A stretch of DNA of 64,000 bases from Mytilus edulis (taxonomy: Eukaryota): contig NC_092353.1 of NCBI RefSeq assembly GCF_963676685.1, forward strand, positions 51,956,001 to 52,020,000, read 5' to 3'. The notes under the pieces are model-generated. The model saw nothing but the letters and a program-made list of their open reading frames with translations. It had not been told where the DNA came from and made no database searches. Below are positions 11,057 to 61,301 of the stretch, one piece after another; the stretch's first letter is position 1, and the number at the start of each line of letters is the position of its first letter. Both the position numbers and the translations under genes were made by a program.

Positions 11057-11794
11057 TCTTGTCTTTAAAAGTTGTCAAACATGTTGGTTTCACCTCACCT
11101 GTTAGCTAAAGGAGGTAGTTGTTAAAAGCAGGAAATCATACCAAAAACAGAAATAATATTTCCTTTTTCAAGGTTAATTGCTTCCACTGAACTTTTGAAC
11201 TTACTTAATATGTACATTGTAACATCTGCAGGAAATGAAGGAGAAAATTAAAAACTATTTAATATAAATAACTCTGTTTTATGGTCAAGGTCATTTACAG
11301 TTTTAATCAGTTAATATCTTTGATAGTTAAGTTTGATTTCAAAGAAATATATCTTTGTATGAACATTTAATAGCTGGGACATATAAAATAGCTGACTTTA
11401 AATATAAAAAAGAAGATGTGGTTTGATTGCCAATAAAACAACTCTTCACAAGAGACCAAATGACACAGAAATTAACATCTATTAGCTCACTGTAGGGCCT
11501 TCATCAATGAGCAAAGCCCAATTAAAATATGAGGTTAAATGGAATCTTATGATAAGTCAATGAAAATGATGAAGGTATTTAGTACGAAGTTGTTTTAATT
11601 TTTGCATTTCTCATTTCCACTGAGGTTATATGGCCCTGCACCTTTCTTCATGGTTCAATGACTAAATGTTTTGGAGAGTCTACATGTTTTAAATAGTACT
11701 GCCATTTTAATTTTAGAAATTGTGTTGTTCTATAAGTTACATCAAGTCCAGAAATATTTCTGTGTCATGCAACAGTTTATATGTATCATTCACA

Positions 11795-33255: not shown

Positions 33256-34622
33256 TTTTTATGCCCCATTTATTGGCATTATGTTTTCTGTTCTGTGTGT
33301 CCATTCGTCCATTTGTCCCGCTTCAGGTTAAAGTTTTTGGTTTGAGGTCAGGTTAAATTTTTTGGTCAAGGTACTTTTTGTCGAGCCTGCAACTTTTGTT
33401 GCAGAAAGCTCGACATAGGCATAGTGATCTGGCGGTGGCAGCGTTAGCTAACTTCTTAAAAGGTTTATATTTTAGAAGGTGAAGACCTGGATGCTTCATA
33501 CTTTGAATATAGATGCCTCATGTTACGAAGTTTCCGTCAGTCACATGTCCAATGTCCTTGACCTCATTTTCATGGTTCAGTGACCACTTGAAAAAAAAGT
33601 TCAGAATTTTTGTAATGTTGAATTCTCTCTTATTATAAGTTAGGATAGCTATATTTGGTATGTGCGTACCTTGCAAGGTCCTCATGCCCGTCAGACAGTT
33701 TTCACTTGACCTCAACCTCATTTCATGGATCAGTGAACAAGGTTAAGTTTTGGTGGTCAAGTCCATATCTCAGATACTATAAGCAATAGGGCTAGTATAT
33801 TTGGTTTATGGAAGGACTGGAAGGTGTACATGTCCAACTGGCAGGTGTCATCTGACCTTGACCTCATTTTCATGGTTCAGTGGTTATAGTTAAGTTTTTT
33901 GTGTTTTGGTCTGTTTTTCTCATACTTTATGCAATAGGTCTACTATATTTGTTGTATGGAATGATAGTAAGGTGTACATGTCTAGCGGGCAGATGTCATC
34001 TGACTTTGACCTCATTTTCATGGTTCAGTGGTCAAAGTTAAGTTTTTAAGTTTTGGTCTTTTTATCTAATATTATATGCCAAAGGTCAACTATATTTGGT
34101 GTATGAAAATATATTATAATCTTTATGTCAGTCCCGCAGGTTTTATTTGACCATGACCTCAATTGCATGGTTCATTCAGGGTTAAGTTTATGTGTTTTGG
34201 TCTATTTTTCTTAAACTAGAAGTAATAGGTCAACTATATTTGTTGTATGGAAGCTTTGTTAGCTGTACATGTCTGCCTGGCATGGTTCATCTGACCTTGA
34301 CCTCATTTTCATTGTTCATTGTTCTTTGTTTAGCTATCTTGGTTAATGTTAAGTTTATGTGACAGTTGTAATAAAGCTATATACTTAGGACTATCAACAT
34401 AATATCAATGATTAGTAAAGAAAGTGAGACATTTCAGTGTGTGCACTCTTGTTGATGAAGTTGAAGTCCAATCTACTTGAAACTTAGTACACATGTTCCC
34501 TATCACATGATCTTTCTAATTTTAATGCTAAATTAGAGTTTTTACCCCATTTTCACGGTTCACTGAACATAGAAAATGATAGTGCGGATGGGGCATCCGT
34601 GTACATGGGACACATTCTTGTT
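33256..34622 (+). mobile_element. HINE family 2 copy interrupted by HINE family 1
   Basis: The two halves (33256-33375 and 34453-34622) rejoin to match 16789-17098. Confidence 0.7.
33376..34452 (+). mobile_element. Second copy of the same HINE family, nested in another HINE
   Basis: Colinear with 19410-20608 with one fewer internal repeat unit. Splits its host at GGTACTTTT|TTGATGAAG. Confidence 0.75.
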
Positions 34623-35227
34623 TTATATGTAGCAAGACACTATCTTGATAAAAGACTACCAAATAATTAAAGATCATAAACTTGAATATCAACTATTAAG
34701 ACAATGGCAAATTTTCTTAACTTTGGTAGGCACACAAACATGCAGCAGGCATAAGCAAGACATTTGTGCAATCAAAACATCATGTTTCAAATTTTATATT
34801 GAAAAAAAACAGTCACTTAAGAAGGTACAGTAGACAGGAAATCGCTGGTTTTGGTAAAACAACATTGAAATAGTCCTCTGGAGCCCTATATAGCTTGCTG
34901 TTTGGTGTAAACCAAGGCTGTGTGCTGAAGGTTGTACTTTGACCTGTTATGGTTTACCTTTTACACATTGTGATTTGGATGGAGTGTTATCTCATTGGCA
35001 CTCATATCCATCACATCTTATTTCTCGTTGAAACCCACATTGCTCTCAGTTGCTTAAAAGCTGACAGCAAGCCCAAACATGCAGATATAAAAGCCATACA
35101 TAATACCTACCCTATAATACCTACAGCTGTACTTCTGAATAGATTGATCAAGGATTTGTATAGTATATAAATCCTTGAATTGATAACAGGATTTTTGAGG
35201 TATGTCCAAAGTATTTTAAGAGAATTA

Positions 35228-36485
35228 TAAAACAGAATATTTATAATAAAAAAAACATTTCAAATATAAAAAAGAAGATGTGGTATGATTGCCAATGAGA
35301 CAACTGTCCACAAGAGACCAAAATGACACAGACATTAACAACCATAGGTCACTGTACGGCCTTCAACAATGAGCAACGTCTGTACCGCATAGTCAGCTAT
35401 AAAAAGTCCTGTTTGAAACACAACGAAATATGATTACTAATCTCCGAACTGAACTTGAATATACTAGGTTCAATAATATAACTATGTTCATGATAAAAAT
35501 TGTTATGATTTGAAAGAAAATTCATCACGTTAATAATTTTGCTTTAACAAATAAACCCATAAAATTAATGTTTTAAACTCAGCACTCAGTCCTGTAACCT
35601 GGGAACAGTATATCGTTAATATATATGTTCCTGGTGAAACCGACTCCTGGACAAGGATAGTTTTGAATGTCATGATGATATGTCTTTCGGGAAACTAAAT
35701 TGAACAATCGACTTTCAAAGGGTTCAAATAAACACAGGCTGGTAAATTCACAATAAAATTCTATTTTTATTTTGATTATCTCAATCTTGCAAAAAATAGC
35801 CGGCAAATGATGAATGATCATTTCCAATAACTGCCTCTGTATGGCCGCTGTGTCTATGCTTAATATAAACACGATCTCCTTTCTTTAATTCAACCAATAC
35901 ACTAATACTACTTTCTTCGTATGGTCCGTTGTTTGAATATCCCTTTACATACAATGAGTCGTTCTTGTTGAGTTGATAACCGACGACTTTTCCATTGTCC
36001 CCATAAATCACACAACTGAAATTATACAATCCATCTCTTTTAGCAGTGAAAATCCCTGTTGATGGGTCGTAGCCTCCACCTCTATTGACCTTTACTCCTT
36101 CAAATATCAACACTTTGTTAGAGTTAGATAAAACAAATCTTTTCGACAATGTTGAGAAGAATGCAGGTCTGATCTGTTTATCTGCAATGAAAATGTAATT
36201 TTAACAATAAGATTTTGTTGTCAAAATGAGTTGGAACAAGAGCATAGCATATACAGTGTTATTTAAGACTATTGAGTATATATCAAAAGAAAATGTGGTG
36301 TCAATGCCTAATGAGACAACTCCCCACAGTCACTAGAGACCAAAATGACGCAGAAATTAACATCTATATGTCACTGTTCGGCCTTCAACAATGAGCAAAA
36401 GCCTATACCGCATATAGTCAGCTATAACATGTCTCGAAAGGACAAATGTAAAGTGAGAAAACTAACACCCTAATTTATGTACAAA
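35228..36485. repeat. Segmental duplication of about 1.3 kb (paralog at about 38787-40093) holding the C1q exon, its 3' region and SINE copies at both ends
   Basis: Colinear from AAAACAGAATATTTATAATAAAA through the exon to CCCTAA.TTATGTACAAA. Confidence 0.9.
35781..36181 (-). CDS. C1qDC gene A exon 3 (globular C1q domain); spliced protein 186 aa
   Basis: ttgcAG acceptor; 401 nt. Carries the C1q signature: PAFF...VLIF..V.VNRGGGYDPSTGIFTA..DGLY.FS...VELKKGDRVYI...SSFAGYFL*. Confidence 0.95.
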
Positions 36486-36691
36486 ATAATGAACGAAAAA
36501 CAAATATCACGGTAACAAATCAACAAACGACATCCTACAAGCTCCTGACGTGGGACATATGTAGATATAAGATGTAGCGGGATTAAAAAAATTCTGAAGC
36601 TTATAATATGCTGCAGTGTTTCAATATTGTGTTGTCATAGAGGAATAGTACCAGACAGTATCACGTGATATTAAATATAAGTTTAACTCAC

Positions 36692-36766
36692 CCCAATCTC
36701 TACCTCTATTGCTATTAATTCTCATGAGCATTTCCAGAAGATCCTCCGTAACGCATGTTGTTTTTC
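36692..36766 (-). CDS. C1qDC gene A exon 2 (short linker/helix)
   Basis: ttttAG acceptor and GTGAGT donor; 75 nt, phase 1-1; GKTTCVTEDLLEMLMRINSNRGRDW. Near-identical to gene C exon 2. Confidence 0.88.
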
Positions 36767-37176
36767 CTAAAACATACGACAATTTAGTACCAATAATAGA
36801 TAAGGGCTCGATAAATTTGCCTCTTTATATAGTAATAGTGGGTTTTTTTTCGATTTTTAAAATTTTTTTTGGATGAATTTACAGGAAAATATTCATGTAT
36901 AAAGCTGAGTATTGGGAACTAGTAACGTCATCTCAATAGTGGTTTTGGACTGGCACATATGTAAGCGATTCAACAATAACTGTGAGGGTTCCAATCATTG
37001 CATTTAACGTAATATCTTGATATTGTACTGTTTTAAATAAGACTGCTAATTTTTAAATGCATGTAGAGCAAGACTTTGGTTAACTTGCTTGCTATGTTTG
37101 TATATTGTGCAATTCTGTACTTGGGATTACGTCCAATCAAATTCAAATATATTCAGGTTTAACTATGCCTAAATGT

Positions 37177-37320
37177 CAGTGACGGATCCAGAAATTTTCA
37201 CAAGTGGGGGCCCACTGACTGACCTAAGAGGGGGCCCGCTCCAGTCACGCTTCAATGATTCCCTATATAAGCAAACAAATTTTTTCCCAAAAAGCCCCCC
37301 CCCCCCTAAATCCGCCTCTG
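37177..37320. mobile_element. hAT-like GC-rich MITE in intron 1 of C1qDC gene A
   Basis: CAGTGACGGATCCAG...AAATCCGCCTCTG with 5-bp TSD AATGT. Same family at about 53351-53530, 57350-57504, 61142-61301 and 62546-62612. Confidence 0.75.
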
Positions 37321-37463
37321 AATGTAATGTTTAAATATGTCAATCTTAATAACAAAGCTTGAGTAAACATTTACATAAACAAAACAAGCAAGCCAATCAA
37401 AGTTTTACTCCACTAGCATTAGGAAATTAGCTTTAACGGTATTTCAAGAATGATTTTCGTTAC

Positions 37464-37548
37464 CTCTTCGTGCATCACAGGTAGCTGTAACTCTTACGGA
37501 AACACCAATAAGAGCAAACAAAACACAAATGAAGCGTAACCATGCCAT
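37464..37548 (-). CDS. C1qDC gene A exon 1 (signal peptide)
   Basis: ATG at 37548-37546; MAWLRFICVLFALIGVSVRVTATCDARR then G|GTAAC donor; 85 nt, phase 1. TATATAA lies about 55 nt upstream. Homologous to gene C exon 1. Confidence 0.88.
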
Positions 37549-37594
37549 TTCAGTACGATGTTTTTCGTTTGGCGTGATAAATTGTTTTCAACAG

Positions 37595-37670
37595 TTGTTT
37601 ATATATTTTAATAACAATCATTATGATGAGGACCTGATACTTTAATTACACCTTCGCGTGTCTACTTTTA
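37595..37670 (-). promoter_or_regulatory. TATA box and conserved promoter block of C1qDC gene A
   Basis: Plus-strand gtttatatattt and actttaattacaccttcgcgtgtctact recur upstream of gene C at 49741-49815 (gtttatatattt; ttttaattacaacttgacgtgcgtact). Confidence 0.55.
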
Positions 37671-38821
37671 TTGGTTTTTGTTCCTCAACTGCACGGCATG
37701 TAAAGTGTATGTAGTGTGGTTCCTGACACCAAAACTGTGTGCATGCATAAGTGTACTAAAAGATTAGCTTGTTGAATCATAACTAGTTTATGTAATGGCT
37801 TTTTATTTGGGTTTGGCGTGACTTGATTTTCAAAGATACGCTTTCAAACTGACAATCCTGCTTATGGCAAATCATGTATTGAAAGAAAAAAAGTTTTTAC
37901 TTACAGAGATACGGTATTATTTTGATCGTTTATACATTAATATTGGGGAGGGGTAGCTCCTTTTTAAGATGAACATTCAAGCTTTTTAACTATCGAAACA
38001 TTATAATAGTGTCTTTTCCTATCAGGCATTATGTGATGCATGGTTGTATGGTTGCATGGCATGCAACAACGAATACATGGGTGTTTTACAATTACAACAT
38101 GTTGTTAATGATGAATCTTGACAAGAGACAATACGCCAAAGACACCCATAGTCTTCAGCAAAAGACAACTGTTTATATCCTGATTAAAAAGTGGCGCATA
38201 GAGGTAACATGCTATACCAATGGTAAGCCTTCTAAATTCAGAAACAAATCCGCAAAACAACAAAAGACCAATACCGACGACACTAGTGGCATGGGATAAA
38301 TTCACGTTGAAAAGGAAATGGTTTGATTCTTTTCCCAAATACTCAGGTGTACATATATAAGCAACAGCTACACTGAATTATCTATACAAAGACCAATTTA
38401 CCACACTGTTTAACAGCAACTGTAAACAGTTAACGTTTATTACAGTATAGATGTGTTGAACGGCTCTCTTTAGTGTGATAGTGTCGTTTAAAAAATACAA
38501 TATGCAGTCAATGGCTATATATTAACAAATTTATGTTCAAAAGAACACTGCTAGTCAGTCTATAAATCAACAACTCCTAAAATTAAGAATGTTATTGTAT
38601 ACAAGTGATGTGTTCCTCAATGGTCAATAAACTGAGCTCGGCTTTTTCAAGTAGAATTTTTTTTTATTTAGTTAGTGTGTAATTTGTATTGGTATAAATC
38701 AAAAACGTGTATAACCTGTAGGATTTATTGTACCGGAAGTCAATAAATATTTGGCCGCGCTATATACAGTAGCAGTTTTAGTTTAAAAACAGAATATTTA
38801 TAATAAAAAAAAAACATTTTC

Positions 38822-38969
38822 AATATAAAAAAGAAGATGTGGTATGATTGCCAATGAGACAACTGTCCACAAGAGACCAAAATGACACAGACATTAACAA
38901 CTATAGGTCACCGTACGGCCTTCAACAATGAGCAAAGCCCATACCGCATAGTCAGCTATAAAAGGCCCC
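38822..38969 (-). mobile_element. Abundant SINE-like repeat (best-preserved copy)
   Basis: AAGAAGATGTGGTATGATTGCCAATGAGACAACT...GGTCACCGTACGGCCTTCAACAATGAGCAAAGCCCATACCGCATAGTCAGCTATAAAAGGCCCC. More than 15 copies or fragments in both orientations, for example near 155, 1645, 5375, 11405, 19130, 24230, 33075, 34880, 35268, 36288, 39875, 43488, 44995, 46115, 53875 and 61110. The family name could not be verified. Confidence 0.75.
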
Positions 38970-39363
38970 AAGTCCTATTTGAAACACAACGAAATATGAT
39001 TACTAATCTCCCGACTTAAATATACTAGGTTCAGTAATATAACTATGTTCATGATAACAATTGTTATGATTTGAAAGAAAATTCATCACGTTAATAATTT
39101 TGCTTTAAAAAATAAACCCATAAAATTAATGTTTTAAACTTTGCAGACTCAGTCCTGTAACCTGGGAACAGTATATCGTTAATATATATGTTCCTGGTGA
39201 AACCGACTCCTGATCAAGGATATTTTTGAATGTCATGATATGTCTTTCGGGAAACTGAATTTAAACTCTAAATTGAACATTCGACATTCAAAGGGTTCAA
39301 ATAAACACAGGCTGGTGTTCACTAGAATGACACAACTAAAATTCTATTTTTATTTTGATTATC

Positions 39364-39764
39364 TCAATCTTGCAAAAAATAGCCGGCAAATGATGAATGA
39401 TCATTTCCAATAACTGCCTCTGTCTGGCCGCTGTGTCTACGCTTAATATAAACACGATCTCCTTTCTTTAAATCAAGCAATACACTAATACTACTTGCTT
39501 CGTATGGTCCGTTGTTCGAATATCCGCTTACATACAATGAGTCGTTCTTGTTGAGTTGATACCCAACGTCTTTACCACTGTCCCCGTAAATCACACAACT
39601 GAAATGATACAATCCATCTCTTTTAGCAGTGAATATCCCGGATGATGGGTCGTAGCCTCCACCTCTATTGACCTTTACTCCATCAAATATCAACACTTTG
39701 TTAGAGTTGGATAAAACAACACTTTTCGACAATGTTGAGAAGAATGCAGGTCTAATCTGTTTAT
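39364..39764 (-). CDS. C1qDC gene B terminal exon (globular C1q domain)
   Basis: ttgcAG acceptor; 401 nt, intact frame and full C1q signature. By hand count it differs from the gene A exon at 23 of 401 nt and 13 of 133 aa. Confidence 0.93.
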
Positions 39765-40258
39765 CTGCAATGAAAATGTCATGTTTTAACAATAAGATTT
39801 AGTTGTCAAGATGAGTTAGAACAAGAGCATAGAGACAGATTTATTAACACCATTGAGTATACTAGTATATTAAAAACAGATGTAGTATGATTGCCAATGA
39901 GACAACTCTCCACAATACGGTAGACCAAATGACACAGAAATTAACAACTATAGGTCACAGTACAGCCTTCAACAATGAGCAAAGCCTATATATCGCATAT
40001 CTATATATTATTAATAGTCAGCTATAAAAGACCCCGAAGTGACAAATGTAAAACGATTCAAACGAGGCAACTAACGCCCTAAATTATGTACAAATGAAAA
40101 AAAAGCACAAATTTAACAAACAATGCTACTCGTGCTACTAGTAATATGATGCTAGGTGGTTTTGTTACACTTTTTTTTATACATCTGTACTGCTTACTGA
40201 CGACTCAGTCCTGGGATTAAATGGCCATTCAGTATGTCAACAAGAAAAAAGAACTAAA

Positions 40259-40679
40259 TTCATTAATATACCCACCAGAACTAGAAATTAAAGAGACCAC
40301 ATACACGGCTTCCTCTGCCTCATTTTTAGACTTATACCTCGAATTTGACATACACAGTCATCTCAGTACCAGAATCTATGACAAACGAGACGATTTTAAT
40401 TTTGAAATTATCAATTTCCCCCACCTTAGTAGTAATATACCAACTTCACCTGCATATGGAATATACATTTCCCAACTTATTAGGTATTCAAGAGCTTGCA
40501 GCTCCTATTCAGACTTTGTAAAACGTCACCAATGTCTGAGCAGAAAATTGATGAACCAGGGGTATGTCAAAGAACGTCTCGTCCTTTTTCTAAAAAAGTT
40601 CATCAGAAGATACCCAGAACTTGTTGATAAATATTCCGTATCAACTTCACAAATAATACAAGATGGTCTTGAAGTATAG
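40259..40679 (+). pseudogene. 5'-truncated Penelope-like retroelement reverse transcriptase (C-terminal/thumb region, Naiad-like)
   Basis: YPPELEIKETT...ASFLDL...TRIYDKRDDFNFEIINFPHLSSNIP.SPAYGIYISQLIRYSRACS...KLMNQGY is typical of the PLE RT thumb. The ORF stops right afterwards with no C-terminal GIY-YIG. Lies antisense within the gene B intron. Confidence 0.85.
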
Positions 40680-40918
40680 ATTTTGCGTACTGACGTTTGT
40701 TATCATCTTAATTACGTATTATAGTATTCTTTTATATGTATTTTTTAGATATTCATTTGAAGTGACTCTGTGGTTACGTAAAACCACATACTTTGAACGG
40801 CAAAATTATTTCATTTATTGATATTACTTTTACTTAAGGATCTTGACATACTATGAATGACTAAACTATTTTATTCAATAAGACTACTTTTTCTGTTTAG
40901 TCTGTTTTTTATGATATA

Positions 40919-41381
40919 CATTTGACGTGAAACTGTACTTATTATTATTACTTTTACTGTTAAATCTGGTTTTTGTTATATCTACTTTACGCGAGTCTGC
41001 ATTTATGTATGCCGTCATACGATAAAATTATTTTTATGTCTACCTGTGCGAATTTCAAACGCGAAATTTTACACCAGTAATGAAAACCTTCTATCATTTA
41101 TGGGTAGACTTTACATAGATAAATTCAGCCGTATTTGACGTGAAACTGTACTTATGTGTCCCGTCATACTTTGAACCACACCATTATTTTATTTATTATT
41201 TTTACTGTAAGTCTGTTTTTTTGTTATATCTACTTTACGTGAGTCTGCATTTATGTATGCCGTCATACGACAAAATTATTTTTATGTCTACCTGTGCGAA
41301 TTTCAAACGCGCAATTTTACACCATTAATGAAAACCTTCTTTCATTTATGGGTAGACTTTACATAGATAAATTCAGCCGTA
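40919..41381 (+). repeat. Tandem duplication (about 213 and 250 bp units) downstream of the PLE RT fragment
   Basis: TTTGACGTGAAACTGTACTTAT...ATAAATTCAGCCGTA occurs twice (40921 and 41134). Confidence 0.8.
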
Positions 41382-41399
41382 TAAGAAAAGCAAAATGAG

Positions 41400-41782
41400 A
41401 ATGTTAAATTTGATGTATGCCTTTTTGTGCTACTTTGTTACATTTGTTGTTTATGTAGTGATATTAAGATGATAACACAATATTGACTGTTGTACCCCTA
41501 TTTTTGACATTTTTACTCTTTGAGTATGTTTGTTTTGTTCATGCATCGTTGACAATGTAATGGAATTTGATGCGACTGTCATACAAGTGAGAGGTTTAGC
41601 TAGCTATAAAACCAGGTTCAATCCACCATTTTCTACATTAGAAAATGCCTGTACCAAGTCAGGAATATGACAGTTGTTATCCATTCGTTTAATGTGTTTG
41701 GACTTTTGATTTTGCCTTTTGATTTTTGATTTTCCTTTTTGAATTTTCCTCGGAGTTCAGTATTTTTGTGTTTTTACTTTTT
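41400..41782 (+). mobile_element. Second interspersed SINE-like family
   Basis: ...AAAACCAGGTTCAATCCACCATTTTCTAC...GTACCAAGTCAGGAATATGACAG...; reverse copies at 3663-3865 and 7885-8040. Confidence 0.65.
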
Positions 41783-42637
41783 TCATAAGGCCTATCTGGC
41801 CTAATTGATTTCTAAAATTATATTTCATTGTTCAACATTTATCATTCATTCGTTTATTGCTTAATTTGTGTGAATTAACAGTAAACGTTTTTCTGCACTT
41901 TCATACCACAACAATACTGCCTTACTGTAGTAATATCACTTATATTTATATCCATATATATATAAAATGACTGAATAAATAGTCAACGATTAATCTTACA
42001 GGGCGATGGATCATGTAATATGATTCTGTACACTACAAAATATAATATATAACAAGTCAAAAAGGGTACAACATCACCATTATATAACTATAAAATGAAC
42101 AAATATTAGATATTTCGGATAACAGACGTATATAACAACAAAAATGAAAACGGGAATATTTTTGAAATACCTTTTTCATTTTGAATGCTATAACTGTTTA
42201 GATGTTTAGACATATTAAGTAGATGTTCATTTATCTTACCTCCTATACATTTATAGGAATATGATTGGTTAATAGCGACCTCGTGGAGACCGTGTATATT
42301 CAATATTAGGTTAATAGGGAGGCGGGGCTTATTTCAATACACGGTTAGTAGTGGATTTACAACTTAGGCATTGTTTGATTATTAAAAAGTATTGAAAGAT
42401 CTGTTTAATATTGTTATATCAAGGTTGTTGATAATAGATATTTGTCGTTTACATTAGTTTTTTAGTGCAGACCAATTGAAGAAGGTTATTAAAATTGAAC
42501 ACTTGAACACTTTTTATACAGAAATAAGAAGATGTGTTATGATAGCAAATAAGACAAATTTAGTCTAAATTCCACAACTAAAGATAGTCGGTAAGATAAA
42601 TTCGTTACATAGTGCGCTAGTGACCTAATATGATATA

Positions 42638-42842
42638 CTGTAAATTCAGAAATTATTACGTGCATTTGTTTTTGCGATTTTGTCATTTGAGACTGAAATG
42701 CGATTTTATTTTTACGATTTTGAGAAAAATCCTGTTTAATTCATATAAAATGTTTCAAAATGCGAGTTCAAATTATTGCGTTTACAACTCTGTCGCATTT
42801 TTCGCAATAATAAAAACCTCGCAATAATTTATGAATTCACAG
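42638..42842. mobile_element. Tc1/mariner-like MITE
   Basis: CTGTAAATTCAGAAATTATT / AATAATTTATGAATTCACAG termini with TA flanks. A decayed copy lies at about 22266-22444. Confidence 0.7.
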
Positions 42843-43587
42843 TATACTGGGTAAGTAAATTTAGACTAAAGATGTCTTATTTGCTATCATATGGAATTTA
42901 CTGACCCTGTATATATCATATTAGGTCACGAACACACTATGTAACTAATAATCCACTAGAAATTTTTATCAGATGACTTCTGTAGCAGTTATGAGTCTTT
43001 GAAGCATGCTCACAAAGGTTCTTTTGTTGATATCATTTTCATACTGGTCAAAACTTTGTTGTGCTTTCACCAGGCTTTGGAGAAGTTATTTTAGAAAAAT
43101 CAATAAAAAAAATAACACAGAAGTTTACTTTCTAGCTCATCTACTCCAAAGCATCATGTCAGGCATTGTCATTACTTAAAATCATTAAATGTCTACTAAT
43201 CTGAGAAACAATTTCGACATTAAAACGAACTTTTTTTACTTATGATACTGAGAAGATCCACCACAAAGTAACATTGTCATATATACTAAGAACCATACAA
43301 ATAGTACGCAAATACATGTTCTCAGATACCATCTCTCGTATAAATAAAATCAATCATGAACAATGGAACCTAATATGTGGGTCTCTCCTACATACAAAAT
43401 ATTTCCAAAATCAAAGATGTGAAACATATTCTATCATAATCATTTGGTTGGCTGTCATTGTGCAACACAGTTAATAGTATATAAAAAAAAAAGAAGATGT
43501 GGTATGATTGCCAATGAGACAACTATCCACAAAAGACCAAAATTACACAGACATTAACAACTATATGTCACCGTACAACCCTATGGG

Positions 43588-44795
43588 AACTAGAGGATCT
43601 CGAGAGCCTGTGTCGCTCACCTTGGTATATGGGCAAATCAAACAAAGGACACTCTCCAACACTAGAAGAGAATAGACCTTGACAAAAATCTCTATTTTGT
43701 TGATCTTGTTTTACTGATCTTTAAGTCTGTTTAGTTTCATTGACTTGGCCAAGTTTGGTTAAATTTGTCTCAGTAGTTTCAGGAGAACATTTTTGTAAAA
43801 GATTACAAAAATTGTCAAAAAATTTACTATGAAGGACAATAATTCCTAAAGGGATTTTTTTGTAGATCTTACTTAGTTAAACAATTTTGCTGTTTACAGT
43901 TTATCTCTATCTATTACGATATTCAAGATAATAATCAAAAATTAAAATTTCTATAAAATTACGAATTCTGAGACAACAACCCATCAACAAGGTTGACTGG
44001 TGCGTCTATTTGCTTGAAATGCTTTAGTTTCAGAGATAAAAGCCAAAAACTGCTGCATTTTATCCCTATATTCTATTTTTAGTCGTGGCAGCCATCTTTG
44101 TTGATGGGCTTTAATCGGATAGATTTTTTTAACTAGATACCCTTAGTTGATTTGGACCAAGTTTGGTTTCATTTGGCCCAGTAGTTTTAGAGAAGATTTT
44201 TGTAAAAACTTACAAAAAATTAAGAAAAGGTGTGAAAAGTTGATTTTAAAGAGCAGTAACTCTTGGTGGGGTCAATTGGCCATTTTGGTCATGTTTGACT
44301 TATTTGTAGATCTTACTTTGCTGATCAATCTTGCTGTGTACAGTTTATCTCTATCTATCATAATATTTAAGACAATAACCAAAAACTGCAAAATTTCCTT
44401 AAGATTAGCAATTTAGGGGCAGCAACCCAACAACAGGTTGTCTGCGTCTGACAATTTTAAGGCAGTTAGATCTTGTTCTGATGAACATTTTACCCTCATG
44501 GCAGATTTGCGCCAAATGCTTCAGTTTAAGAGCTATAAGCCCAAAACTGTAATTTACCCCCATGTTCTACTTTAAGCATTGGCGGCCATCTTGTCTGGTT
44601 GATGGGCGGGGTCATCGGATACATTTTTTAAAACTAGATACCCTATAAAGGATGATTTAGGCCAAGTTTGGTTTCATTTGACCCGGTAGTTTCGGAGGAG
44701 AAGATTTTTCTAAAAGTTAATGGGCGACGACGACGACAGACAACGACGGACGACTGACGCCGAGTGATGAGAAAAGCTTACTTGGCCCTTTGGGA
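43588..44795 (-). mobile_element. Degenerate HINE-type element with internal repeats
   Basis: AACTAGAGG...GTCGCTCACC terminus, repeated blocks (GGCCAAGTTTGGTT three times; CAGTTTATCTCTATCTAT twice) and a (GAC)n/(GACG)n microsatellite near the other end. Confidence 0.6.
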
Positions 44796-45282
44796 AATCC
44801 TTTTGTCAGAAACACTGTAAAACATCCAAACATACTATCCACACTGATCTGTGTCCACACTTGAATCACTATAACGGTGAGGTTGAATTCCATGCAATTT
44901 ATTCATCATCCACACAGGAACTTGTCTCAGAAAAAAAATCTACGTGACAATTAAAACAATTTATGAAGCCTACAACTTTTCATAGATATACAAATAAATA
45001 GATGTAGTATGATTGCCAACTATTCACCAGAAACTAGAGTGACATAAAAGTTAACAACTGTAGGTAACAGTACGGCCTTCAACAATGAGCAAAACTCATA
45101 CCACATACGGTCAGCTATAGCCTGGAAATGACAAATGTGAAACAATTCAAATTATAAATAGAGATGCTTAGTGTTTGGGCTTACGGCTTAAGAAAACTAA
45201 GCTGTAAGTGTAAAAAAAAATAGCAAATTAGCATGTAAGTAAGTGTAAAATTTATGAAATTTACTGTAACAAAGAACCCTAC

Positions 45283-45898
45283 CTTTCTTCTCTTTTAAAG
45301 CAATTTCTTGCAAAGAGGTATTGAAACGATTTGAAAGTTCCACAATTTTATCAAACGACGCATTAAATCTGTTCTGTTCTTGGTGAAGAGATGCCTGCAT
45401 TGTATTCTCTATTTTACGTTCAGCTTCACTTAATTCTTGTATTTTAGAAGAAAACGAATCCAACAGCGTGTTAATTTTTTTTTCGTACATCTCAGTTTTA
45501 TTTTCAGACTGCAGTTTAAAATTGTCTATTGTTTCAAGGAAAGACTCTTTAAACCGCGTTTGGTCCTGAAGATGTGATTCAACAAATGTTTCTGTTTTTT
45601 TCTTCTGCTCGACCACTTTATCCAGACTGGAAGAAATAGATTCTTCCCATAGCTTCATCTTTTCCGCATACACTTTCATTTTATTTTCAATGCTAGAAGA
45701 AAATGATTCTTCCCATAGGTTCATCTTTTCAGTGTATACTTCCATTTTATGTTCCAAGCGCACAAGTTTTTCTAGCACCTTTTCTTCAAAATCAAACTTT
45801 GAACAGGCCGATAATAAGGAACCGGACTCTGAACCAATCGAGCTGGCTAAAGTCACAAATATTGATAAAATTAAGCATACGAATTGAAAGAAAATCAT
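45283..45898 (-). CDS. C1qDC gene B exon 1: signal peptide plus long coiled-coil stalk (predicted to splice to 39764; 338-aa protein)
   Basis: Hydrophobic N-terminus MIFFQFVCLILSIFVTLASS, then CSKFDFEEKVLEKLVRLE and about 170 aa of E/K/L-rich heptad-like sequence. Donor AAAG|GTAGG at 45282; 616 nt gives phase 1, compatible with the C1q exon. The pairing with that exon is inferred. Confidence 0.8.
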
Positions 45899-47565
45899 TT
45901 TGGATGTTCTTGCGATCTACACTTTACAGAAAATAAAATGTGCACTTAAACCATAAGATAACTTTGTTCTTCATATAAAGACGTAAGTCGATTTCCGAGG
46001 TGTCAAAGTTTTCAAATAAGTGTTTTATATAAGGAGGGTTACGTATCTAGTTCGATTCGAAACTGCACTTGACCTTATAACAGATGTATTATGAGACATT
46101 AAAATTAAATACGTAGATATAGGAAGATTTGGTATGAGTGCCAATGAGACAACTCTCCATGCAAGTCACAATTTACAAAAGTAACTACCATAGGTCAAAG
46201 TACAGTCTTCAACACGGAGCCTTGGCTTACACCGAACAGCAAGCTATATAGGTCCCCAATAATGACTAGTGTAAAACCATTTAAACGGGAAAACCAATGG
46301 TCTAATCTAAATAAAAAACGAGAAACGAGAAACAATTATGAACCACATCAACAAACGACAACTACTGAACATAAGGTTCCTGACTTAGAACAGGTGCAAA
46401 CTAATGCGGCGGGTTTAAACGTTTTAATAGGTACCAACCTTCACCCTAGCCTGAAACAATAGTGTAACATCACAACATAGAGAGACACCATAAAATAGCA
46501 ATTGAAATGAATTAACTCAAACAAAAAATATATTAACACAAGTGAACATACACTGAACGAATAAATTTAATTTATGACACAATGAAAATACAAAATCAAT
46601 CAAATAAGGGGTGTGATGTAAAACAATTTCAGAAAGACAATCATAACCTTGAACAAAATGCCGCCAAATAGAATAATGTACACAGGTAAATGAAAATAAT
46701 CAATTTGACAATTTATCCATTTCCCACCATTTAGCGTCCGTCCATTTATGTAAGAAAAAAAACATAACTAGTGATGCAAGCTGTTTAGTCTACTATCGAA
46801 CCAATCCTTGTACAAATCATACTGTTATATATATATAAGTCTACTATCGGACGAAATGATGCTGTTAAATCGAATGTTGGACCAATGTTTTATACAATGT
46901 GGTTTTTAATCTACTATAGGAACAATGCTTGAAAAAAAAATCATGCGGTTAAATCTTCAATCGGACAATTGTTTGTACAAATGATGTGATTAAATCAACT
47001 TATTAGTGGAAGTTGTGGTGCAGGCTGTCTCCTCTTTACGATTTCTGGAACAGGACTGGCTTGCTCAAAACTATGGCTAAATTTAGCTATTGGTTAGCTT
47101 ATCCAATGGATAATTATATATACAGTGGTCTACTATCCTTTAGCTATTTTTCAATTTTATAAACACATGAAACCATAACGCAAATACAAATACAGGTTTA
47201 TCAGACTTTGACGTAAATGTCTAAAAAAAACTTAATTAAATCATACATTGCTTTACATTTATACAAGAATACTTTGTTTTGTTGCAGCATTAATCAATCA
47301 AAGATTTCCTTTTTTGATACAAAATTATAAAAGTGAAAATCTACTTTCATGTACTAGAGTATCATACAACTTTATTTTCAAATCATGACATTTTTCAATA
47401 TTACTTATAATAGGCTACAAAATACATGAAACTGATTACGACTGGAACTGGAAATATTTAGGATCGGGCCATCATCATCCAAAGCGATTGAACCAAATAT
47501 AAGGAGGTTGCGTTCAAAAGAAACACAATACTTCTAACTATATTTGATTACTTTATTTTAGGATT

Positions 47566-47966
47566 TTATTCTTGCAAAAAATACCCGCCAAATGATGAAT
47601 GATCACTACCAATTACTTTATCGGTGTTGCCGCTGTGTCTATGTTGGATATAAACCCGATCTCCTTTCTTTAATTCCATCAATACACTGAGAGTACTGGC
47701 TTCGTATGCTCCGTTATTTGAGTACCCCTTCACGCATAAAGATTCGTTCTTGTTGAGCTGGTAACCAACATCATCTCCCCTGTCCCCATAAATCACACAA
47801 CTAAAATGATACAATCCGTCCCTCGTAGCAGTGAAGATACCAGTTGATAGATCATATCCTCTACCTCTATTCACCCGTACATCTTCAAATTTTAGCACCT
47901 TGTTTGAATCGGACAAAGAGACACTGCCTTTTAATGAAGCGAAGAAAGCAGGTTTTATCTTTTCAT
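47566..47966 (-). CDS. C1qDC gene C exon 3 (globular C1q domain); spliced protein 185 aa
   Basis: ttgcAG acceptor; 401 nt; DEKIKPAFFASL...GYDLSTGIFTATRDGLYHFS...ELKKGDRVYI...SSFGGYFLQE*. Confidence 0.95.
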
Positions 47967-48184
47967 CTGCAATAGAATTAATTAATTTTTCATGCTTAAA
48001 GTTAGCGTATGTAATGTAAAATAAGTTAAAGCATTGGTAAGAAAGTAAATCGAAACTTTGCTAAAATTAATATTAATTGTTTATTTTATTCCGCTTGTCA
48101 ATTCTTATCAGAGTTATCAATATATCTGTCCTTTCAATGCAAGAGAGCAAACATAATCAGAAGAATGGACAGTCAGACGTTTTA

Positions 48185-48439
48185 GGCAGCAACCATTTGA
48201 TTTTCTGGGGGGGGGGGGGGGGGGGGGGGGGGGCTATGGTTTTTTTTGGAAAAAAAAGTTTGTTTCCAGTTTTTGGAGAAAAAAATAATTTGTTTTTGAT
48301 TCTGAGAAAAAAAAATTGTTTGTTTCACCCTCAGCTGCCACTTTATGTAATGCTAAAATTGAAAAAAAAAAATTGTCCAGAAAAAAAAACCATAGCACCC
48401 CCCCCCCCCCCCCCCCCAGAAAATCAAATGGTTGCTGCC
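48185..48439. mobile_element. PIF/Harbinger (Tourist-like) MITE in intron 2 of C1qDC gene C
   Basis: TIR GGCAGCAACCATTTGATTTTCT-(G)n / (C)n-AGAAAATCAAATGGTTGCTGCC and a 3-bp TSD TTA (48182-48184, 48440-48442). Confidence 0.85.
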
Positions 48440-49018
48440 TTACATCAAGCGGGAAAACGGGTTAGTCACGAAAATTTCATATCGAAAACCAGATCAATTA
48501 AGGTTATTTTGAAACCTCAATGGTATTTTTTTTTCACATTTTAAGAGTAGCCGTGTAATTTGAAATACAAATGGAAATGCCTTCTTGTTAGGATACCCGA
48601 AACTTCAGCAACAACGAGTTATCATTATATTGTGCATGGCTTCTGCAAAGTCATAAGGTGAAACGCGAATGGTTTTTGGCTTTGCATTTTCGCATTCGCA
48701 ATTACCTCGACTGAGATGGACGCAATACCGCGTATAGGCGACAATTTCCGCCATGCTTAAGAAGTATGGTAGGTTTTAGTTTGTAACCCGGATTTGTTTT
48801 CTATTAATCAATTTATGACATTTGAAATAGTGTTGCCTTTATTTATAAGCTAACATGCGTTTTGAATTGATCTGATCTTCAAGAAATTCATCTATGTCTA
48901 AATTTCAACCTTTCCAAAATATCAGTTTATATGATGATCCTGTTTATATGTGTCAAATGTTTTAATAGAAATAATATAGTCACTGACAATATCATATGAC
49001 TGTAAACAATTAACTTAC

Positions 49019-49090
49019 CACTCCCACTATTCCGACTATTAATTCTGATTAGCATTTCCAGAAGATCTTCCGTAACGCATGTTGTTTTTC
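49019..49090 (-). CDS. C1qDC gene C exon 2
   Basis: ttttAG acceptor and GTAAGT donor; 72 nt, phase 1-1; GKTTCVTEDLLEMLIRINSRNSGS. Confidence 0.88.
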
Positions 49091-49149
49091 CTAAAAAAAA
49101 AAGAGTTCTTTTCGTGATTTATCCTGATTTCCTTGATCATGAAGGCTGC

Positions 49150-49470
49150 TTTTAAAAGGAAGTGATTAAACCTAGGGTTACATGTGGTTAAGTTGAAGTC
49201 ATCCCTTCGAAAGTTTTGCAGATGTCTTTGCGAGTGTGTTACAGATTACCACGACAAAAATCTTTCCTACGTATTGACGATGAGATTTATCTACGACATT
49301 GTGCTTACCATGATAAACACAACGGACGCCATTAGTAAAGCAGGATCTACTACCTTTGCTCAAGCATCTGAGAACACTCTAATCTTTTTGAGGGGTTCCT
49401 GTTGCTTAGTCCTTATATTCTATGGAGTGTTTTGTCGACTTGTTTGTCTTTTGGTCGTCTTTCGTTCTTA
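49150..49470 (+). mobile_element. Decayed Penelope-like 3' fragment in intron 1 of C1qDC gene C
   Basis: VKLKSSLRKF-like codons, then AACACAACGGACGCC...AGCAGGATCTACTACC...GGGGTTCCTGTTGCTTAG, similar to 8436-8680. Confidence 0.55.
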
Positions 49471-49606
49471 TCGAATTTTCAATTGCGTATTATTCACTTT
49501 TTCTCTAATTTTCAATTAAACAAAGTAAGAAACAAATTGTGTCATTAAGATTTAACATTTAACAATGGATGAGACAAAAATTTATCGAAAGCAATATTCA
49601 CGTGAC

Positions 49607-49691
49607 CTCTTTGTGTATTACAAGAAGCTCCAACTCCTAAGGAAACACCAGTAAGAGCAAACAAAACAAAGATGAAGCTTGAACATGCCAT
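49607..49691 (-). CDS. C1qDC gene C exon 1 (signal peptide)
   Basis: MACSSFIFVLFALTGVSLGVGASCNTQR then G|GTCAC; 85 nt, the same length and phase as gene A exon 1. TATATAAA lies about 55 nt upstream. Confidence 0.86.
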
Positions 49692-52069
49692 TCCAATTGA
49701 TAGTCTACAATGCCGTCATTCTTTTCCTAAACTTTATAAATGTTTATATATTTGAATTTGAAATATTGATCATGGTATCATAAAACTTTAATTACAACTT
49801 GACGTGCGTACTTCTCGCAACTTTGGTGTGCTTTTCAATACCAACTTACTACGTGTGCGAGAGTCAGGCGAAAGGAATAATTAAACTCATAACTTCATAT
49901 AAATAAAGTTGTTCTTTTCAATAATAAGAAATTGAAAAAAAAAAGACAATAAGTATCGATCAAAGATAAATCAGTTATTGAAAGCTAGTCCAAAGCTCAA
50001 TTTCAACTAAAGTTAAAGACAAACAATGTTTTTTCTAGACTAAAATGTCAATTTTTGCATCCTTAACAGATTTAGTGTAAAGACGTATCAACAGTCGGAT
50101 AAATGCATGACTTCTGTCAATGGCGCAATTCCAAAATACACAATAAATAATAGGTTTCAAACGGATGTTTGGGATCATAATTTCGTATAAGGGAAAACAG
50201 CAAAAATATAATGTTGTGTTTTTTTAAAAAATAATGCAGAAAAAATTTCCAATGGAAGTACCCTACTGATCAAGATCTAATAACAATGTTAAAGGCGAAT
50301 GTTAAATGTATACCCTGTTTAAAGTAAACGTTTTTTTCTTCAAAGGACCGATACAGAAGCGACTACATGGATCGCATCTTAAATTACAAGCTTTACAAAC
50401 AGCATCATCATATATTTTGTTATGTAAACATGTAAGGTGGAATCTTAAACAAAAACGGACTGTCAATAACTAGCACTATTAGACTGCTTTGTTTTACTTC
50501 GCTTTTTGTTTTCTGAAAGACTCCCCCCGTTTTACTTTGAATCCACCCTACGTCACGCCACTGTTTGCCTGGTATAAATGTATTACTTCCATAGAAATCT
50601 AAAAAATGGGTATAGTGTAAACTTAGGCTAGACTACTATCAAGAATTTCCAAAAAGTCCGGCCAGGCAGTAAAAAACAGAAAAATCAATTACCGGTAAAA
50701 ATGGTTCGGTGCATAATATAAAGAACTGAATTGGAACCCTCTCTGTCCATTTAATCCGCCCCTGGTCTCAGACATAGGTCGACTTTTTCTTTATTCTACT
50801 TTGTCTAGATGTAAAGCGGGAGGGTAGAGATCTCAAACAACGTCACAAACTCCGCCGTATTTTGGGGCCTATCCCAAGTCAGTGGCATCTTGCCTTTATT
50901 AATCTTGTATGTTTTTTTTTAAATTTTAGTTCATTGTTTAGGCCGGTTTATGAAGACGTCTTTTTTCACTGAACTAGTACACATTTTTATTAATTAAGCA
51001 AGAGGCAAGCTGAAGCCCGCCTCCAGGTGCGGGATTTTCTGACTGCTTTGAAGACCCATTTGTGGACTTCGGCTATGTTCAGCTCATTGGTCGGGTTATT
51101 GTCTCTTTCACACATACCCTAATTCCATTCCCAGTTTTATTCATACAAACTGTTTCCGTCATTTGTGACAATTTTGTCCGTGGACATATTATATTTAAAG
51201 ATTCCAAAAGTTTGAGTCCAGACAATCATCTTATATAAACTGCCGCAAGTTGATATTCAGTCATCGTCAAACTCTAAAATTATTTTCTTGTTTTTGTTTT
51301 TATTGATCTAAAGTAATCATTAGAGATATACCGGGCGTGGTGTTTTCTAGTATATAATTAACAATATTGATATGATAACTGCTATACCTTCTCACATAAG
51401 AATTTATCAATATAAATTTATCAAAGTTATGTAAACATTACCACTTGATAATAAACACACGTGTTGAATTGCATATAACAGATTAGCTTAGTTAAATTAC
51501 GTTTTTTTTGTTTTTTTTTAATTTTTTTTTATAGTTTATCAGTAGGAGCTGACCATGATATTTGTGATAAATTTCAAATATTTGTTCTATAGTTTTGGCG
51601 AATGCATGTAGGTTTTTGAGATATTGTCTTTCGCCAGTTCAGCAAAGTTTCCCCATCATCTCAGGCCCAAAGGCGGACTTAGAGGGGACCACGTCGCCCC
51701 CTTCTGTGGAACAAATTTAGTATATTTTATAAGGAATCTCTAAATCATGAATGAAGCGCCCCTCTAGTCCGCAGTGTGCCCCTGAGCATTTCTGGATTCC
51801 GCCACTGTCTCCACCCTACAAATGTATGTTTCTTATGTAATTGAATTATATCAAGGATTTGTATAGAAATTAGTTATGACTTTAGAATGTTTATTCAAAA
51901 TGAATGTCACATTTCGGTATTATTTGTATTTGCATGCATAACGAAAATTGTTCTATTCAGGTTTGATTTTTTTAGTCAAAAAGTCATTTTGAAAATTATC
52001 ATGATTATTCAGATAAATTGCATGTGAAAATATAACAAACGCTTAAAAATTAACAAAACATATTTGTTC

Positions 52070-61141: not shown

Positions 61142-61301
61142 AAGTGGCGGATCCAGAACTTTTCCTAAGGGGGGGCCCGCTGACTGACCTAAGAGGGGGC
61201 CCCCTCCAGTCATGTTTCAATGATTCCCTATATAATCAACCAAATTTTTCCAACGAAAGAAGGGGCCCGGGCCCCCCAGGGCCCCCCTGGATCCGCCTAT
61301 G
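61142..61301. mobile_element. hAT-like MITE nested in a SINE-like repeat
   Basis: AGTGGCGGATCCAG...CTGGATCCGCCTATG with 5-bp TSD GACTA. Interrupts the SINE-like copy at 61110-61440. Confidence 0.75.

What the first reader, a model, noticed from the sequence alone, without database searches (positions are those of the whole stretch)
35228..49800. Mosaic C1qDC cluster: lectin heads and stalks have different histories (exon shuffling caught in the act)
Seen: genes A and C share the promoter block, an 85-nt signal exon and a 75/72-nt linker exon. A's C1q exon, however, is about 94% identical to B's (23/401 differences, hand count) and clearly further from C's. No A/C-type N-terminal exons were found between 39764 and 45283. 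The only upstream partner for B's head is an unrelated 616-nt signal plus coiled-coil exon with a matching phase-1 donor. Known: bivalve C1qDC families are hugely expanded pattern-recognition lectins in short and coiled-coil forms. Inference: an A-type head was copied behind a different stalk, or the reverse, giving nearly the same binding domain two oligomerisation architectures. This would be a modular route to immune-receptor diversity.
Basis: partly seen in the sequence, partly recalled or inferred. Interest (0 to 1): 0.8.

Follow-up and report, generated by a model that had tools for sequence, protein, structure and literature searches.

The report
Mussel C1q lectin head swapped between stalks
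In this mussel (Mytilus) genome one almost identical C1q lectin "head" exon sits behind three unrelated leader or stalk exons, and RNA reads show the predicted coiled-coil-to-head splice is real. This is a well-supported but not brand-new case of exon shuffling in an immune lectin family.

Summary
Three minus-strand C1q head exons lie in the window: A 35781-36181, B 39364-39764 and C 47566-47966. A and B differ at 23 of 401 bases, A and C at 91. A and C share 85-nt signal and 75/72-nt linker exons. B's only upstream partner is the 616-nt exon 45283-45898, which has a phase-1 donor.

The predicted junction is real. 57 RNA-seq reads and two transcript contigs join 45283 to 39764 with GT..AG ends. 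Gene models in another M. edulis assembly and in M. trossulus have the same junction.

The stalk is nested among coiled-coil stalks that carry a quite different C1q head (about 25% identical). The head belongs to a five-copy clade otherwise borne by short signal-linker genes. An AU test rejects a common history (p = 0.0007).

"Caught in the act" is not supported, because M. trossulus shares the chimera. A is not B's special partner either. The block [B head + gene A] was also copied to chromosome C6, where the head is spliced to a third, short coiled-coil leader. The four heads are equidistant (18-25 differences).

The 5' edge of the A/B duplicate lies at a SINE-like repeat. This is a solid new example of a known mechanism, of moderate interest.

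The parts
45283..45898 (-). Gene B exon 1. It encodes a signal peptide plus a 171-residue helical (coiled-coil type) stalk in 616 nt, with a phase-1 donor GTAGGG.
   Evidence: ORF and splice site were defined. AlphaFold gives helix 2-20 and one continuous helix 34-204 at mean pLDDT 84. Homologues are stalks of coiled-coil C1q proteins. RNA contigs cover the part laid (45283-45519), and their record lengths imply they run on over the whole exon to about 56 nt upstream of the ATG (table 8).
39765..45282 (-). Gene B intron, 5518 nt, full of repeats. It holds no A/C-type leader exons and no relic of the stalk family's usual head.
   Evidence: The joint 39764|45283 skips 5518 nt, with CT..AC on the + strand, which is GT..AG on the minus strand. 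No leader exons were found. No V-type head was found.
39364..39764 (-). Gene B terminal exon: an A-type gC1q head, 401 nt including the stop codon, with a phase-1 acceptor.
   Evidence: Pfam C1q E = 9.6e-22. It differs from A's head at 23/401 bases. RNA-seq depth is about 56 over 39520-39719, and 57 reads span the junction.
38786..40094 (-). B copy of the 1.3-kb A/B duplicate block. In order it holds a SINE-like repeat R2b (39868-40110), about 100 nt of intron, the head exon, the 3' flank and a SINE-like repeat R1b (38827-38969).
   Evidence: Self-BLAST gives 87% over 1325 columns. Identity by segment is R2 81.5%, R2-to-acceptor 89%, exon 94.3%, 3' flank 95.3% and R1 94.5%.
35229..36485 (-). 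A copy of the same block, holding R2a (36286-36500), A's head exon and R1a (35268-35409).
37464..37548 (-). Gene A exon 1 (signal peptide, 85 nt).
   Evidence: The spliced product is identical to database protein P0040, named 'complement C1q-like protein 3 [M. edulis]'.
36692..36766 (-). Gene A exon 2 (Cys-containing linker, 75 nt, phase-1 donor).
35781..36181 (-). Gene A exon 3 (gC1q head, 401 nt).
49607..49691 (-). Gene C exon 1 (signal peptide, 85 nt; 15 differences from A's exon 1).
49019..49090 (-). Gene C exon 2 (linker, 72 nt).
47566..47966 (-). Gene C exon 3, an older A-type gC1q head. It differs from A at 91/401 bases, with dS about 1.
34449..39821 (-). Block [B head + 3' flank + intergenic DNA + whole gene A + downstream DNA]. 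It has a paralogous copy on chromosome C6 at 49895314-49905880.
   Evidence: Collinear BLAST segments show 87-95% identity. The 3' ends pair A with A' and B with B'.

Best explanation
Gene B is a real, expressed two-exon C1q-domain lectin gene assembled from pieces of two different C1qDC lineages.

Exon 1 (45898-45283) comes from a family of long coiled-coil stalks spread along chromosome C10. Every stalk in B's sister and enclosing clade whose head could be assigned carries a quite different C1q head, here called the V type (it begins VALTAC). Exon 2 (39764-39364) is a copy of the head of the short signal-linker genes A and C. All these leader exons end in phase 1 and all the heads begin in phase 1, so any leader can be spliced to any head.

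The most likely route has two steps. First, the A unit (38786-35229) was duplicated in tandem, or its 1.3-kb head segment alone was copied. Second, the upstream copy lost its own leader exons and came to lie behind a stalk exon whose original head is gone. The 5' edge of the A/B homology falls in a SINE-like repeat, which points to repeat-mediated recombination or deletion.

The chimera arose before M. edulis and M. trossulus separated. Afterwards the block [B head + gene A] was copied between chromosomes C10 and C6. On C6 the head is spliced to a third leader, a signal peptide plus a short coiled coil (the MgC1q76 type).

The result is one recognition head presented on three predicted architectures: a Cys-containing linker, a helix of about 170 residues, and a helix of about 30 residues.

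Shown: the anatomy, the splice junction, and the incongruence of stalk and head. Inferred: the order of events, the role of the SINE, gene conversion among the heads, and any functional consequence for oligomerisation or avidity.

The confidence of 0.8 applies to the core claim of an expressed chimera made by exon shuffling before the species split. The specific two-step route deserves about 0.4.
For: - Junction: 57 RNA-seq reads from 25 start positions (run X24) join 39764 to 45283 with GT..AG ends. One contig each in runs X1 and X6 does the same.
- Independent gene models P0001 (M. edulis) and P0002 (M. trossulus) read ...ALKEKK|DKxIRPAFF at that junction.
- Stalk tree: the B stalk with P0001 and P0002 (100/98) is sister (99/98) to V-headed stalks from M. 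trossulus, M. galloprovincialis and C10:37.28 Mb. That pair is nested in a 13-row clade (100/99) whose other members have V heads wherever the head could be assigned.
- Head tree: B's head lies in a 13-row A-type clade (100/99) together with the signal-linker and short-coiled-coil proteins. The V heads form a separate 100/100 clade.
- Forcing the heads of that stalk clade together costs 97.8 lnL, p-AU 0.0007.
- Only five A-type heads exist in this genome.
- Phase-1 donors and acceptors were read directly from the sequence.
- The window holds no relic V head and no A-type leader exons in the B intron.
- C6 block duplicate.
- A loose end in run X1 equals the last 30 nt of the C6 leader exon.
- SINE at the edge: R2a and R2b are 81.5-86% identical, no more alike than unrelated copies, against 94-95% in the exon and 3' flank.
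- Helical stalk.
Against: - The physical order of events is not resolved. A partial copy of the stalk with its promoter may instead have landed upstream of an orphan head copy. Homology to the nearest stalk paralogue covers the exon, 62 nt of 5' UTR, 21 nt of intron and a patch about 1 kb upstream, which fits either order.
- The graded fall in A/B identity (95% to 89% to 81%) could also reflect an older duplicate whose exon and 3' flank were later homogenised by gene conversion.
- The M. trossulus evidence is a RefSeq gene model.
- The group tested by AU was defined from the stalk tree, but after the head tree had been seen.
- Runs X1, X2 and X6 are only guessed to be RNA. Only X24 is on record as RNA-seq.
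- No protein-level or oligomerisation data exist.
Confidence: 0.8

Rival explanations
1. A very recent swap, still 'in the act'. A's head was copied behind the stalk within the M. edulis lineage, and the 94% identity dates the event.
For: A and B heads and their 3' flanks are 94-95% identical. Among the four young heads dS is only 0.05-0.13 and dN/dS is 0.34-0.94.
Against: M. trossulus P0002 has the orthologous stalk (90% identical, placed as in the species tree, 100/98) already joined to an A-type head. The M. trossulus A-like and B-like heads group together (99/91), as expected if gene conversion keeps resetting the apparent age. The four heads form a star, not an A-B pair.
Confidence: 0.1
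2. The stalk moved, not the head. An orphan head copy left by a partial tandem duplication of gene A lay upstream of A. A partial duplicate of a coiled-coil gene (promoter plus exon 1) then landed upstream and captured it.
For: No relic of a V-type head exists anywhere in the window. Homology to the nearest stalk paralogue is limited to the promoter region and exon 1. On C6 the same head was captured by a different leader, with only 57 nt of shared intron. Other first-stage notes report orphan C1q head exons elsewhere in this genome (untested).
Against: The edge of the A/B block at a SINE fits a deletion that fused two neighbouring genes equally well. Stalk-family genes are dispersed along C10 as whole genes with heads. 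This is still exon shuffling, so it differs from the best explanation only in the order of events.
Confidence: 0.35
3. Assembly or annotation artefact. B's head would be a collapsed or misplaced haplotype copy of A, or an untranscribed orphan exon.
For: The near-identical copies lie 3.6 kb apart in a highly heterozygous genome.
Against: B has its own 12 unique substitutions, its own distinct flanks and an intact ORF. Junction reads tie it to the stalk exon. The same chimera is present in an independent M. edulis assembly (P0001), and M. trossulus gene models include both the chimera (P0002) and a separate A-type gene (P0041). A paralogous copy of the [head + gene A] block lies on chromosome C6.
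Confidence: 0.02
4. One stalk, several alternative terminal heads. The stalk exon would be spliced alternatively to B's head and to other heads downstream (A's, or others), so that diversity arises by alternative splicing and not by fixed chimeras.
For: A's head, with an identical acceptor context, lies 3.6 kb further downstream on the same strand. Database models with the same short leader and different heads are labelled as isoforms in M. trossulus. First-stage notes elsewhere in this genome propose alternative terminal C1q exons (untested).
Against: Within the laid stretch the only joint listed for the 45283 donor goes to 39764. A has its own promoter and leader exons and an exact database product (P0040).
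Confidence: 0.1

Closest known systems
Bivalve C1qDC proteins, classes sghC1q and sC1q-like type II (Gerdol, Greco and Pallavicini 2019, PMC6835236)
   Same: A and C fit the short secreted form. B fits the type II form of signal peptide, coiled-coil tail and gC1q domain. The family is hugely expanded in bivalves, clustered in tandem and fast-evolving.
   Different: That paper attributes the expansion to tandem duplication followed by diversification. A term search of its main text found no occurrence of 'shuffling', 'gene conversion' or 'recombination'. Here a head of the short class has been transplanted onto a type II stalk and onto a second, shorter leader, so the classes are not separate lineages.
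MgC1q76 and MgC1q49 of Mytilus galloprovincialis (database names of P0039 and P0042)
   Same: MgC1q76 is the short-coiled-coil form of the same head, 90% identical to the head of P0001, the M. edulis model of gene B. MgC1q49 is a signal-linker form at 80% on the same measure.
   Different: They were catalogued as separate family members. Their shared head and different leaders were not linked in any paper I could find, and the held library has no paper naming MgC1q76.
Classical exon shuffling through phase-compatible introns (phase-1 modules of extracellular proteins)
   Same: The modules are secreted-protein modules bounded by phase-1 introns, moved by DNA-level duplication, with repeats at the breakpoints.
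   Different: The shuffled unit here is a terminal exon with its 3' UTR, not an internal symmetric exon. The donor and recipient belong to the same superfamily, so one C1q head replaced another.

Membership tests
C1q domain-containing (C1qDC) proteins | A globular C1q domain (Pfam PF00386) above the gathering score | tested here: met
   Heads A, B and C score 75-78 bits against a cutoff of 23.7, covering profile positions 1-127 of 127.
sC1q-like type II (signal peptide + coiled coil + gC1q) | An N-terminal signal peptide | tested here: inconclusive
   The hydrophobic start MIFFQFVCLILSIFVTLASS is predicted as helix 2-20, followed by a low-confidence linker. No signal-peptide predictor was available.
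sC1q-like type II (signal peptide + coiled coil + gC1q) | A coiled-coil region between the signal peptide and the C1q domain | tested here: inconclusive
   AlphaFold predicts one uninterrupted helix over residues 34-204 at pLDDT 85-95. Homologues are coiled-coil C1q proteins. No coiled-coil predictor or oligomer model was run, and Pfam finds nothing in the stalk.
sC1q-like type II (signal peptide + coiled coil + gC1q) | Stalk and head are joined in one mRNA | tested here: met
   57 junction reads and two contigs, plus the P0001 and P0002 gene models.
Exon shuffling (chimeric gene made from parts of two genes) | Compatible intron phases at the new junction | tested here: met
   The 616-nt stalk exon, the 75/72-nt linker exons and the 163-nt C6 leader all end in phase 1. 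All head exons start in phase 1.
Exon shuffling (chimeric gene made from parts of two genes) | The two parts have significantly different phylogenies or parents | tested here: met
   Stalk tree, head tree, AU test p = 0.0007. Head identity between B and the nearest stalk relative's head is about 25%.
Exon shuffling (chimeric gene made from parts of two genes) | The chimera is transcribed with an intact reading frame | tested here: met
Exon shuffling (chimeric gene made from parts of two genes) | DNA breakpoints and mechanism are identified | tested here: inconclusive
   The 3' edge is at 35229/38786, just past a SINE-like copy. The 5' edge is within or next to another copy, whose A/B identity is only at background level. 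The order of events is unresolved.

The most novel reading that the evidence does not exclude
C1q head exons with their 3' flanks, and short leader exons with their promoters, may behave in Mytilus as freely recombining cassettes. In this genome one head sits behind three leaders. One leader (96% identical copies on C6 and C9) sits in front of a C1q head and an H-type lectin head. Other assemblies pair that same leader with further heads. If this is general and varies between haplotypes, mussels would generate lectin diversity combinatorially, as stalk by head and across lectin families. This would act on top of tandem duplication and might contribute to the well-known presence/absence variation of their immune genes.
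Probability: 0.3. Interest if true: 0.75.

Novelty: new member of a known kind. Interest (0 to 1): 0.5.

Why it matters
Bivalves have hundreds of C1q lectins, and the accepted account of that expansion is tandem duplication followed by point-mutation divergence. This locus gives a concrete, transcript-verified case in which diversity was instead produced by recombining modules.

The same recognition head, over 90% identical, is mounted on a Cys-containing linker, on a helix of about 170 residues and on a helix of about 30 residues. That makes a natural experiment on how stalk architecture changes avidity and oligomer state with binding specificity held nearly constant.

It also shows that the structural classes used to sort these proteins (sghC1q versus type II) are not evolutionary lineages. 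Apparent youth of paralogues may also reflect gene conversion. The mechanism itself, phase-1 exon shuffling at repeat-rich breakpoints, is textbook, so the value lies in the example and in the hint that it may be common in this genome.

Tried and rejected
- Relic of the stalk family's original V-type head in the window: none found. tblastn with P0004 finds only weak matches (25-29% identity) to heads A, B and C.
- A/C-type leader exons in B's intron: only chance matches of 8-13 nt.
- Head of the nearest stalk paralogues within 7-8 kb downstream: not there. A genome search then placed it 10 kb downstream, at C10:37295192, with an in-frame TGA.
I fetched the head exons alone instead.
Synteny and nucleotide-level orthology could not be examined.
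- Site patterns among A, B, A' and B' to order the duplications: almost uninformative, 2 against 1 shared sites, giving a star tree. The 3' flank ends were more informative.
- Homology of B's intron to the intron of the nearest stalk paralogue, to decide which module moved: only 21 nt plus a repeat.
- C1q head downstream of the C9 leader copy: none within 6 kb. The database model there has an H-lectin head.
- Literature on MgC1q76: no paper in the held library names it.
Exons were searched separately, and database proteins P0001 and P0002 stood in for the joined form.

Full report
**What is there.** The window is G000:C10:51956001-52020000 of a Mytilus genome. Gene A's product is identical to the database protein 'complement C1q-like protein 3 [Mytilus edulis]', P0040.

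tblastn with B's head finds exactly three C1q heads in the window, all on the minus strand. Reading the minus strand and checking splice sites by script gives these models:
- Gene A is 37548-37464 (85 nt), 36766-36692 (75 nt) and 36181-35781 (401 nt).
- Gene C is 49691-49607 (85 nt), 49090-49019 (72 nt) and 47966-47566 (401 nt).
- B's head is 39764-39364 (401 nt).
- The stalk exon is 45898-45283 (616 nt, donor GTAGGG).

All leader exons end in phase 1 and all heads start in phase 1. Heads A and B differ at 23/401 bases, A and C at 91 and B and C at 93. All three match Pfam C1q. No A/C-type leader exons lie in 39765-45282.

**The junction is real.** RNA-type runs hold about a quarter of the words of 39364-45898, roughly the exonic share. 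I laid four runs on 39520-45519.
- The joint 39764|45283 skips 5518 nt. Its ends are CT..AC on the + strand, which is GT..AG on the gene's strand.
- 57 raw RNA-seq reads in X24 carry it. They start at 25 places, and the longest short side is 68 nt.
- One contig in X1 and one in X6 also carry it. By their record lengths, these contigs should run on over the whole stalk exon to about 56 nt upstream of the ATG.
- It is the only joint listed for that donor.

Two database gene models read the same junction...ALKEKK|DKxIRPAFF. They are P0001 (M. edulis, another assembly, 98% identical over the stalk) and P0002 (M. trossulus RefSeq model, 90%).

AlphaFold, given a 20-sequence alignment, models the stalk exon as a signal helix plus one helix over residues 34-204, at pLDDT 84.

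**Different histories.** The stalk exon belongs to a family with about 50 matches in this genome, mostly on C10 at 36-55 Mb.
- Its nearest relatives are P0003 (M. galloprovincialis), P0004 (M. trossulus) and C10:37284425. They are 71-72% identical (P0003, P0004) and 76-92% identical (the C10:37.28 Mb copy), with almost the same signal peptide.
- These relatives carry a C1q head beginning VALTAC that is only about 25% identical to B's.
- In the stalk tree, (B, P0001, P0002) has support 100/98. It is sister (99/98) to that V-headed trio and nested in a 13-row clade (100/99) whose other members carry V heads wherever a head could be assigned.
- In the head tree, B lies in a 13-row A-type clade (100/99) with signal-linker proteins (A, C, MgC1q49, M. 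trossulus P0041 and P0043) and short-coiled-coil proteins. The V heads sit across the deepest branch, at 100/100.
- Forcing the heads of the stalk's clade to be one group costs 97.8 log-likelihood units, p-AU 0.0007. I chose this group from the stalk tree, but after seeing the head tree.

So the chimera is real. By parsimony the stalk lineage originally had a V head, and the A-type head originally had a signal-linker leader.

**Not 'in the act', and not just A and B.** Both the B-stalk clade and its V-headed sister contain M. trossulus as well as M. edulis or M. galloprovincialis members. M. trossulus P0002 already has the A-type head. The swap therefore most likely predates that split.

The genome holds only five A-type heads: A, B and C here, and two on chromosome C6. 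C6:49895314-49905880 is a collinear duplicate, 87-95% identical, of window 39821-34449. That stretch is [B head + 3' flank + intergenic DNA + all of gene A + downstream DNA]. The 3' ends pair A with A' and B with B'. The A/B duplication therefore came first, and the block was copied afterwards.

On C6 the homology starts only 57 nt before the acceptor. The head (B') is the terminal exon of P0038, named 'cerebellin-1-like'. Its leader exon (49891264-49891426, 163 nt, phase 1) encodes a signal peptide and a short coiled coil, as in MgC1q76. A loose end in run X1 equals the last 30 nt of that leader exon, so this junction also occurs in transcript-type contigs.

The four young heads are equidistant at 18-25 differences. 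They have almost no shared derived sites, dS of 0.05-0.13 and dN/dS of 0.34-0.94. Against C, dS is about 1 and dN/dS is 0.15. The M. trossulus A-like and B-like heads group by species (99/91). I take this as a sign of gene conversion between the tandem heads. It is an inference that needs M. trossulus DNA.

**Mechanism.** The A/B block runs from a SINE-like repeat upstream of the acceptor (R2) to just past another copy downstream (R1).
- Identity is 94-95% in the exon, the 3' flank and R1.
- It is 89% in the 100 nt between R2 and the acceptor.
- It is 81.5-86% within R2, which is no better than between unrelated copies of the repeat.
- The 3' edge (35229/38786) is where a tandem unit 38786-35229 would abut its twin.

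The simplest reading is a tandem duplication of the A unit, followed by a repeat-mediated deletion or recombination. That second step removed the upstream copy's leader exons and the stalk gene's own head.

The alternative is that a partial duplicate of the stalk and its promoter landed upstream of an orphan head. It cannot be excluded. Homology to the nearest stalk paralogue covers only the exon, short flanks and a patch about 1 kb upstream, and no V-head relic remains.

**Comparison with what is known.** B fits the bivalve 'sC1q-like type II' class, and A and C fit the short secreted class (PMC6835236). That paper explains the family's expansion by tandem duplication and positive selection. 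A term search of its main text found no occurrence of 'shuffling', 'gene conversion' or 'recombination'. Two further searches found no paper on C1qDC exon shuffling in bivalves and no paper naming MgC1q76. Exon shuffling through phase-1 introns is textbook, so this is a new, well-documented member of a known kind.

**Limits.**
There is therefore no synteny from other species and no complete pairing of stalks with heads.
- Only X24 is on record as RNA.
- Signal peptide and coiled coil were not tested with dedicated predictors.
Exons were searched apart.
- Other first-stage notes on this genome mention orphan C1q head exons and a promoter-capture chimera. I did not test them.

Noticed in passing
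G000:C9:7730314-7730475 (locus L068), compared with C6:49891264-49891425 (locus L030): The short coiled-coil leader exon of the C6 C1q gene has a 96% identical copy on chromosome C9, with 85-88% nucleotide identity over at least 1.6 kb of flank. There it is the leader of P0047, whose head is an H-type lectin domain (PF09458, E = 1e-15). The same leader therefore serves two unrelated lectin folds in one genome.
   Followed up: partly
Database proteins P0045 (MgC1q35), P0046, P0049 and P0051, against G000 C5, C6 and C7: Proteins from other Mytilus assemblies, ESTs and species carry the identical short leader on three further heads: two other C1q types and a Cys-rich domain. In this genome the best matches to those heads lie on other chromosomes, or 4 Mb from the leader. 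They may reflect presence/absence variation, alternative terminal exons or chimeric models.
   Followed up: partly
window 45627-45754 (-): The B stalk contains an internal tandem duplication of a 66-nt (22-aa) unit, KMEVYTEKMNLWEESFSSSIEN / KMKVYAEKMKLWEESISSSLDK, 84% identical. The nearest stalk paralogue lacks it. Other family members have up to about 8 copies of another repeat, so stalk length is itself variable.
   Followed up: no
window 35268-35409, 36286-36500, 38827-38969, 39868-40110, 43487-43580, 44988-45125, 46123-46270, 11397-11520: A SINE-like element of about 140-260 nt ending ...GGCAATCATACCACATCTTCTTTTTTATA is scattered through the locus and flanks the head exons of both A and B. 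Contig depth over one copy (bin 43320-43519) is very high, in the thousands.
   Followed up: partly
G000:C10:37295192-37295569 (locus L055): The V-type head that pairs with the stalk most similar to B's has an in-frame TGA in this assembly. The sister gene may be a pseudogene or a null allele here.
   Followed up: no
window 39581 and 39634: All four runs read G where the reference has T (+ strand) inside B's head exon. The assembled allele differs from the common one at these two sites (table 3).
   Followed up: no
window 40221-40679 (+): A 152-aa ORF with no Pfam match lies inside B's intron on the opposite strand. The region shows modest RNA-type coverage with many variant letters, so it is probably part of a repeated element.
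   Followed up: no
window 48230-48430 and 37176-37300: Long G runs and C runs flank short inverted sequences in intron 2 of gene C. A related G-rich element in intron 1 of gene A has copies at 53351-53449, 57388-57505 and 61143-61249. It looks like a fold-back or MITE-type repeat.
   Followed up: no
C6:49895960-49896590 (loci L002 and L032): The 3' flank of the C6 head copy B' carries an insertion of about 630 nt, made of two tandem units of about 300 nt. The insertion is absent from A, B and A'.
   Followed up: no
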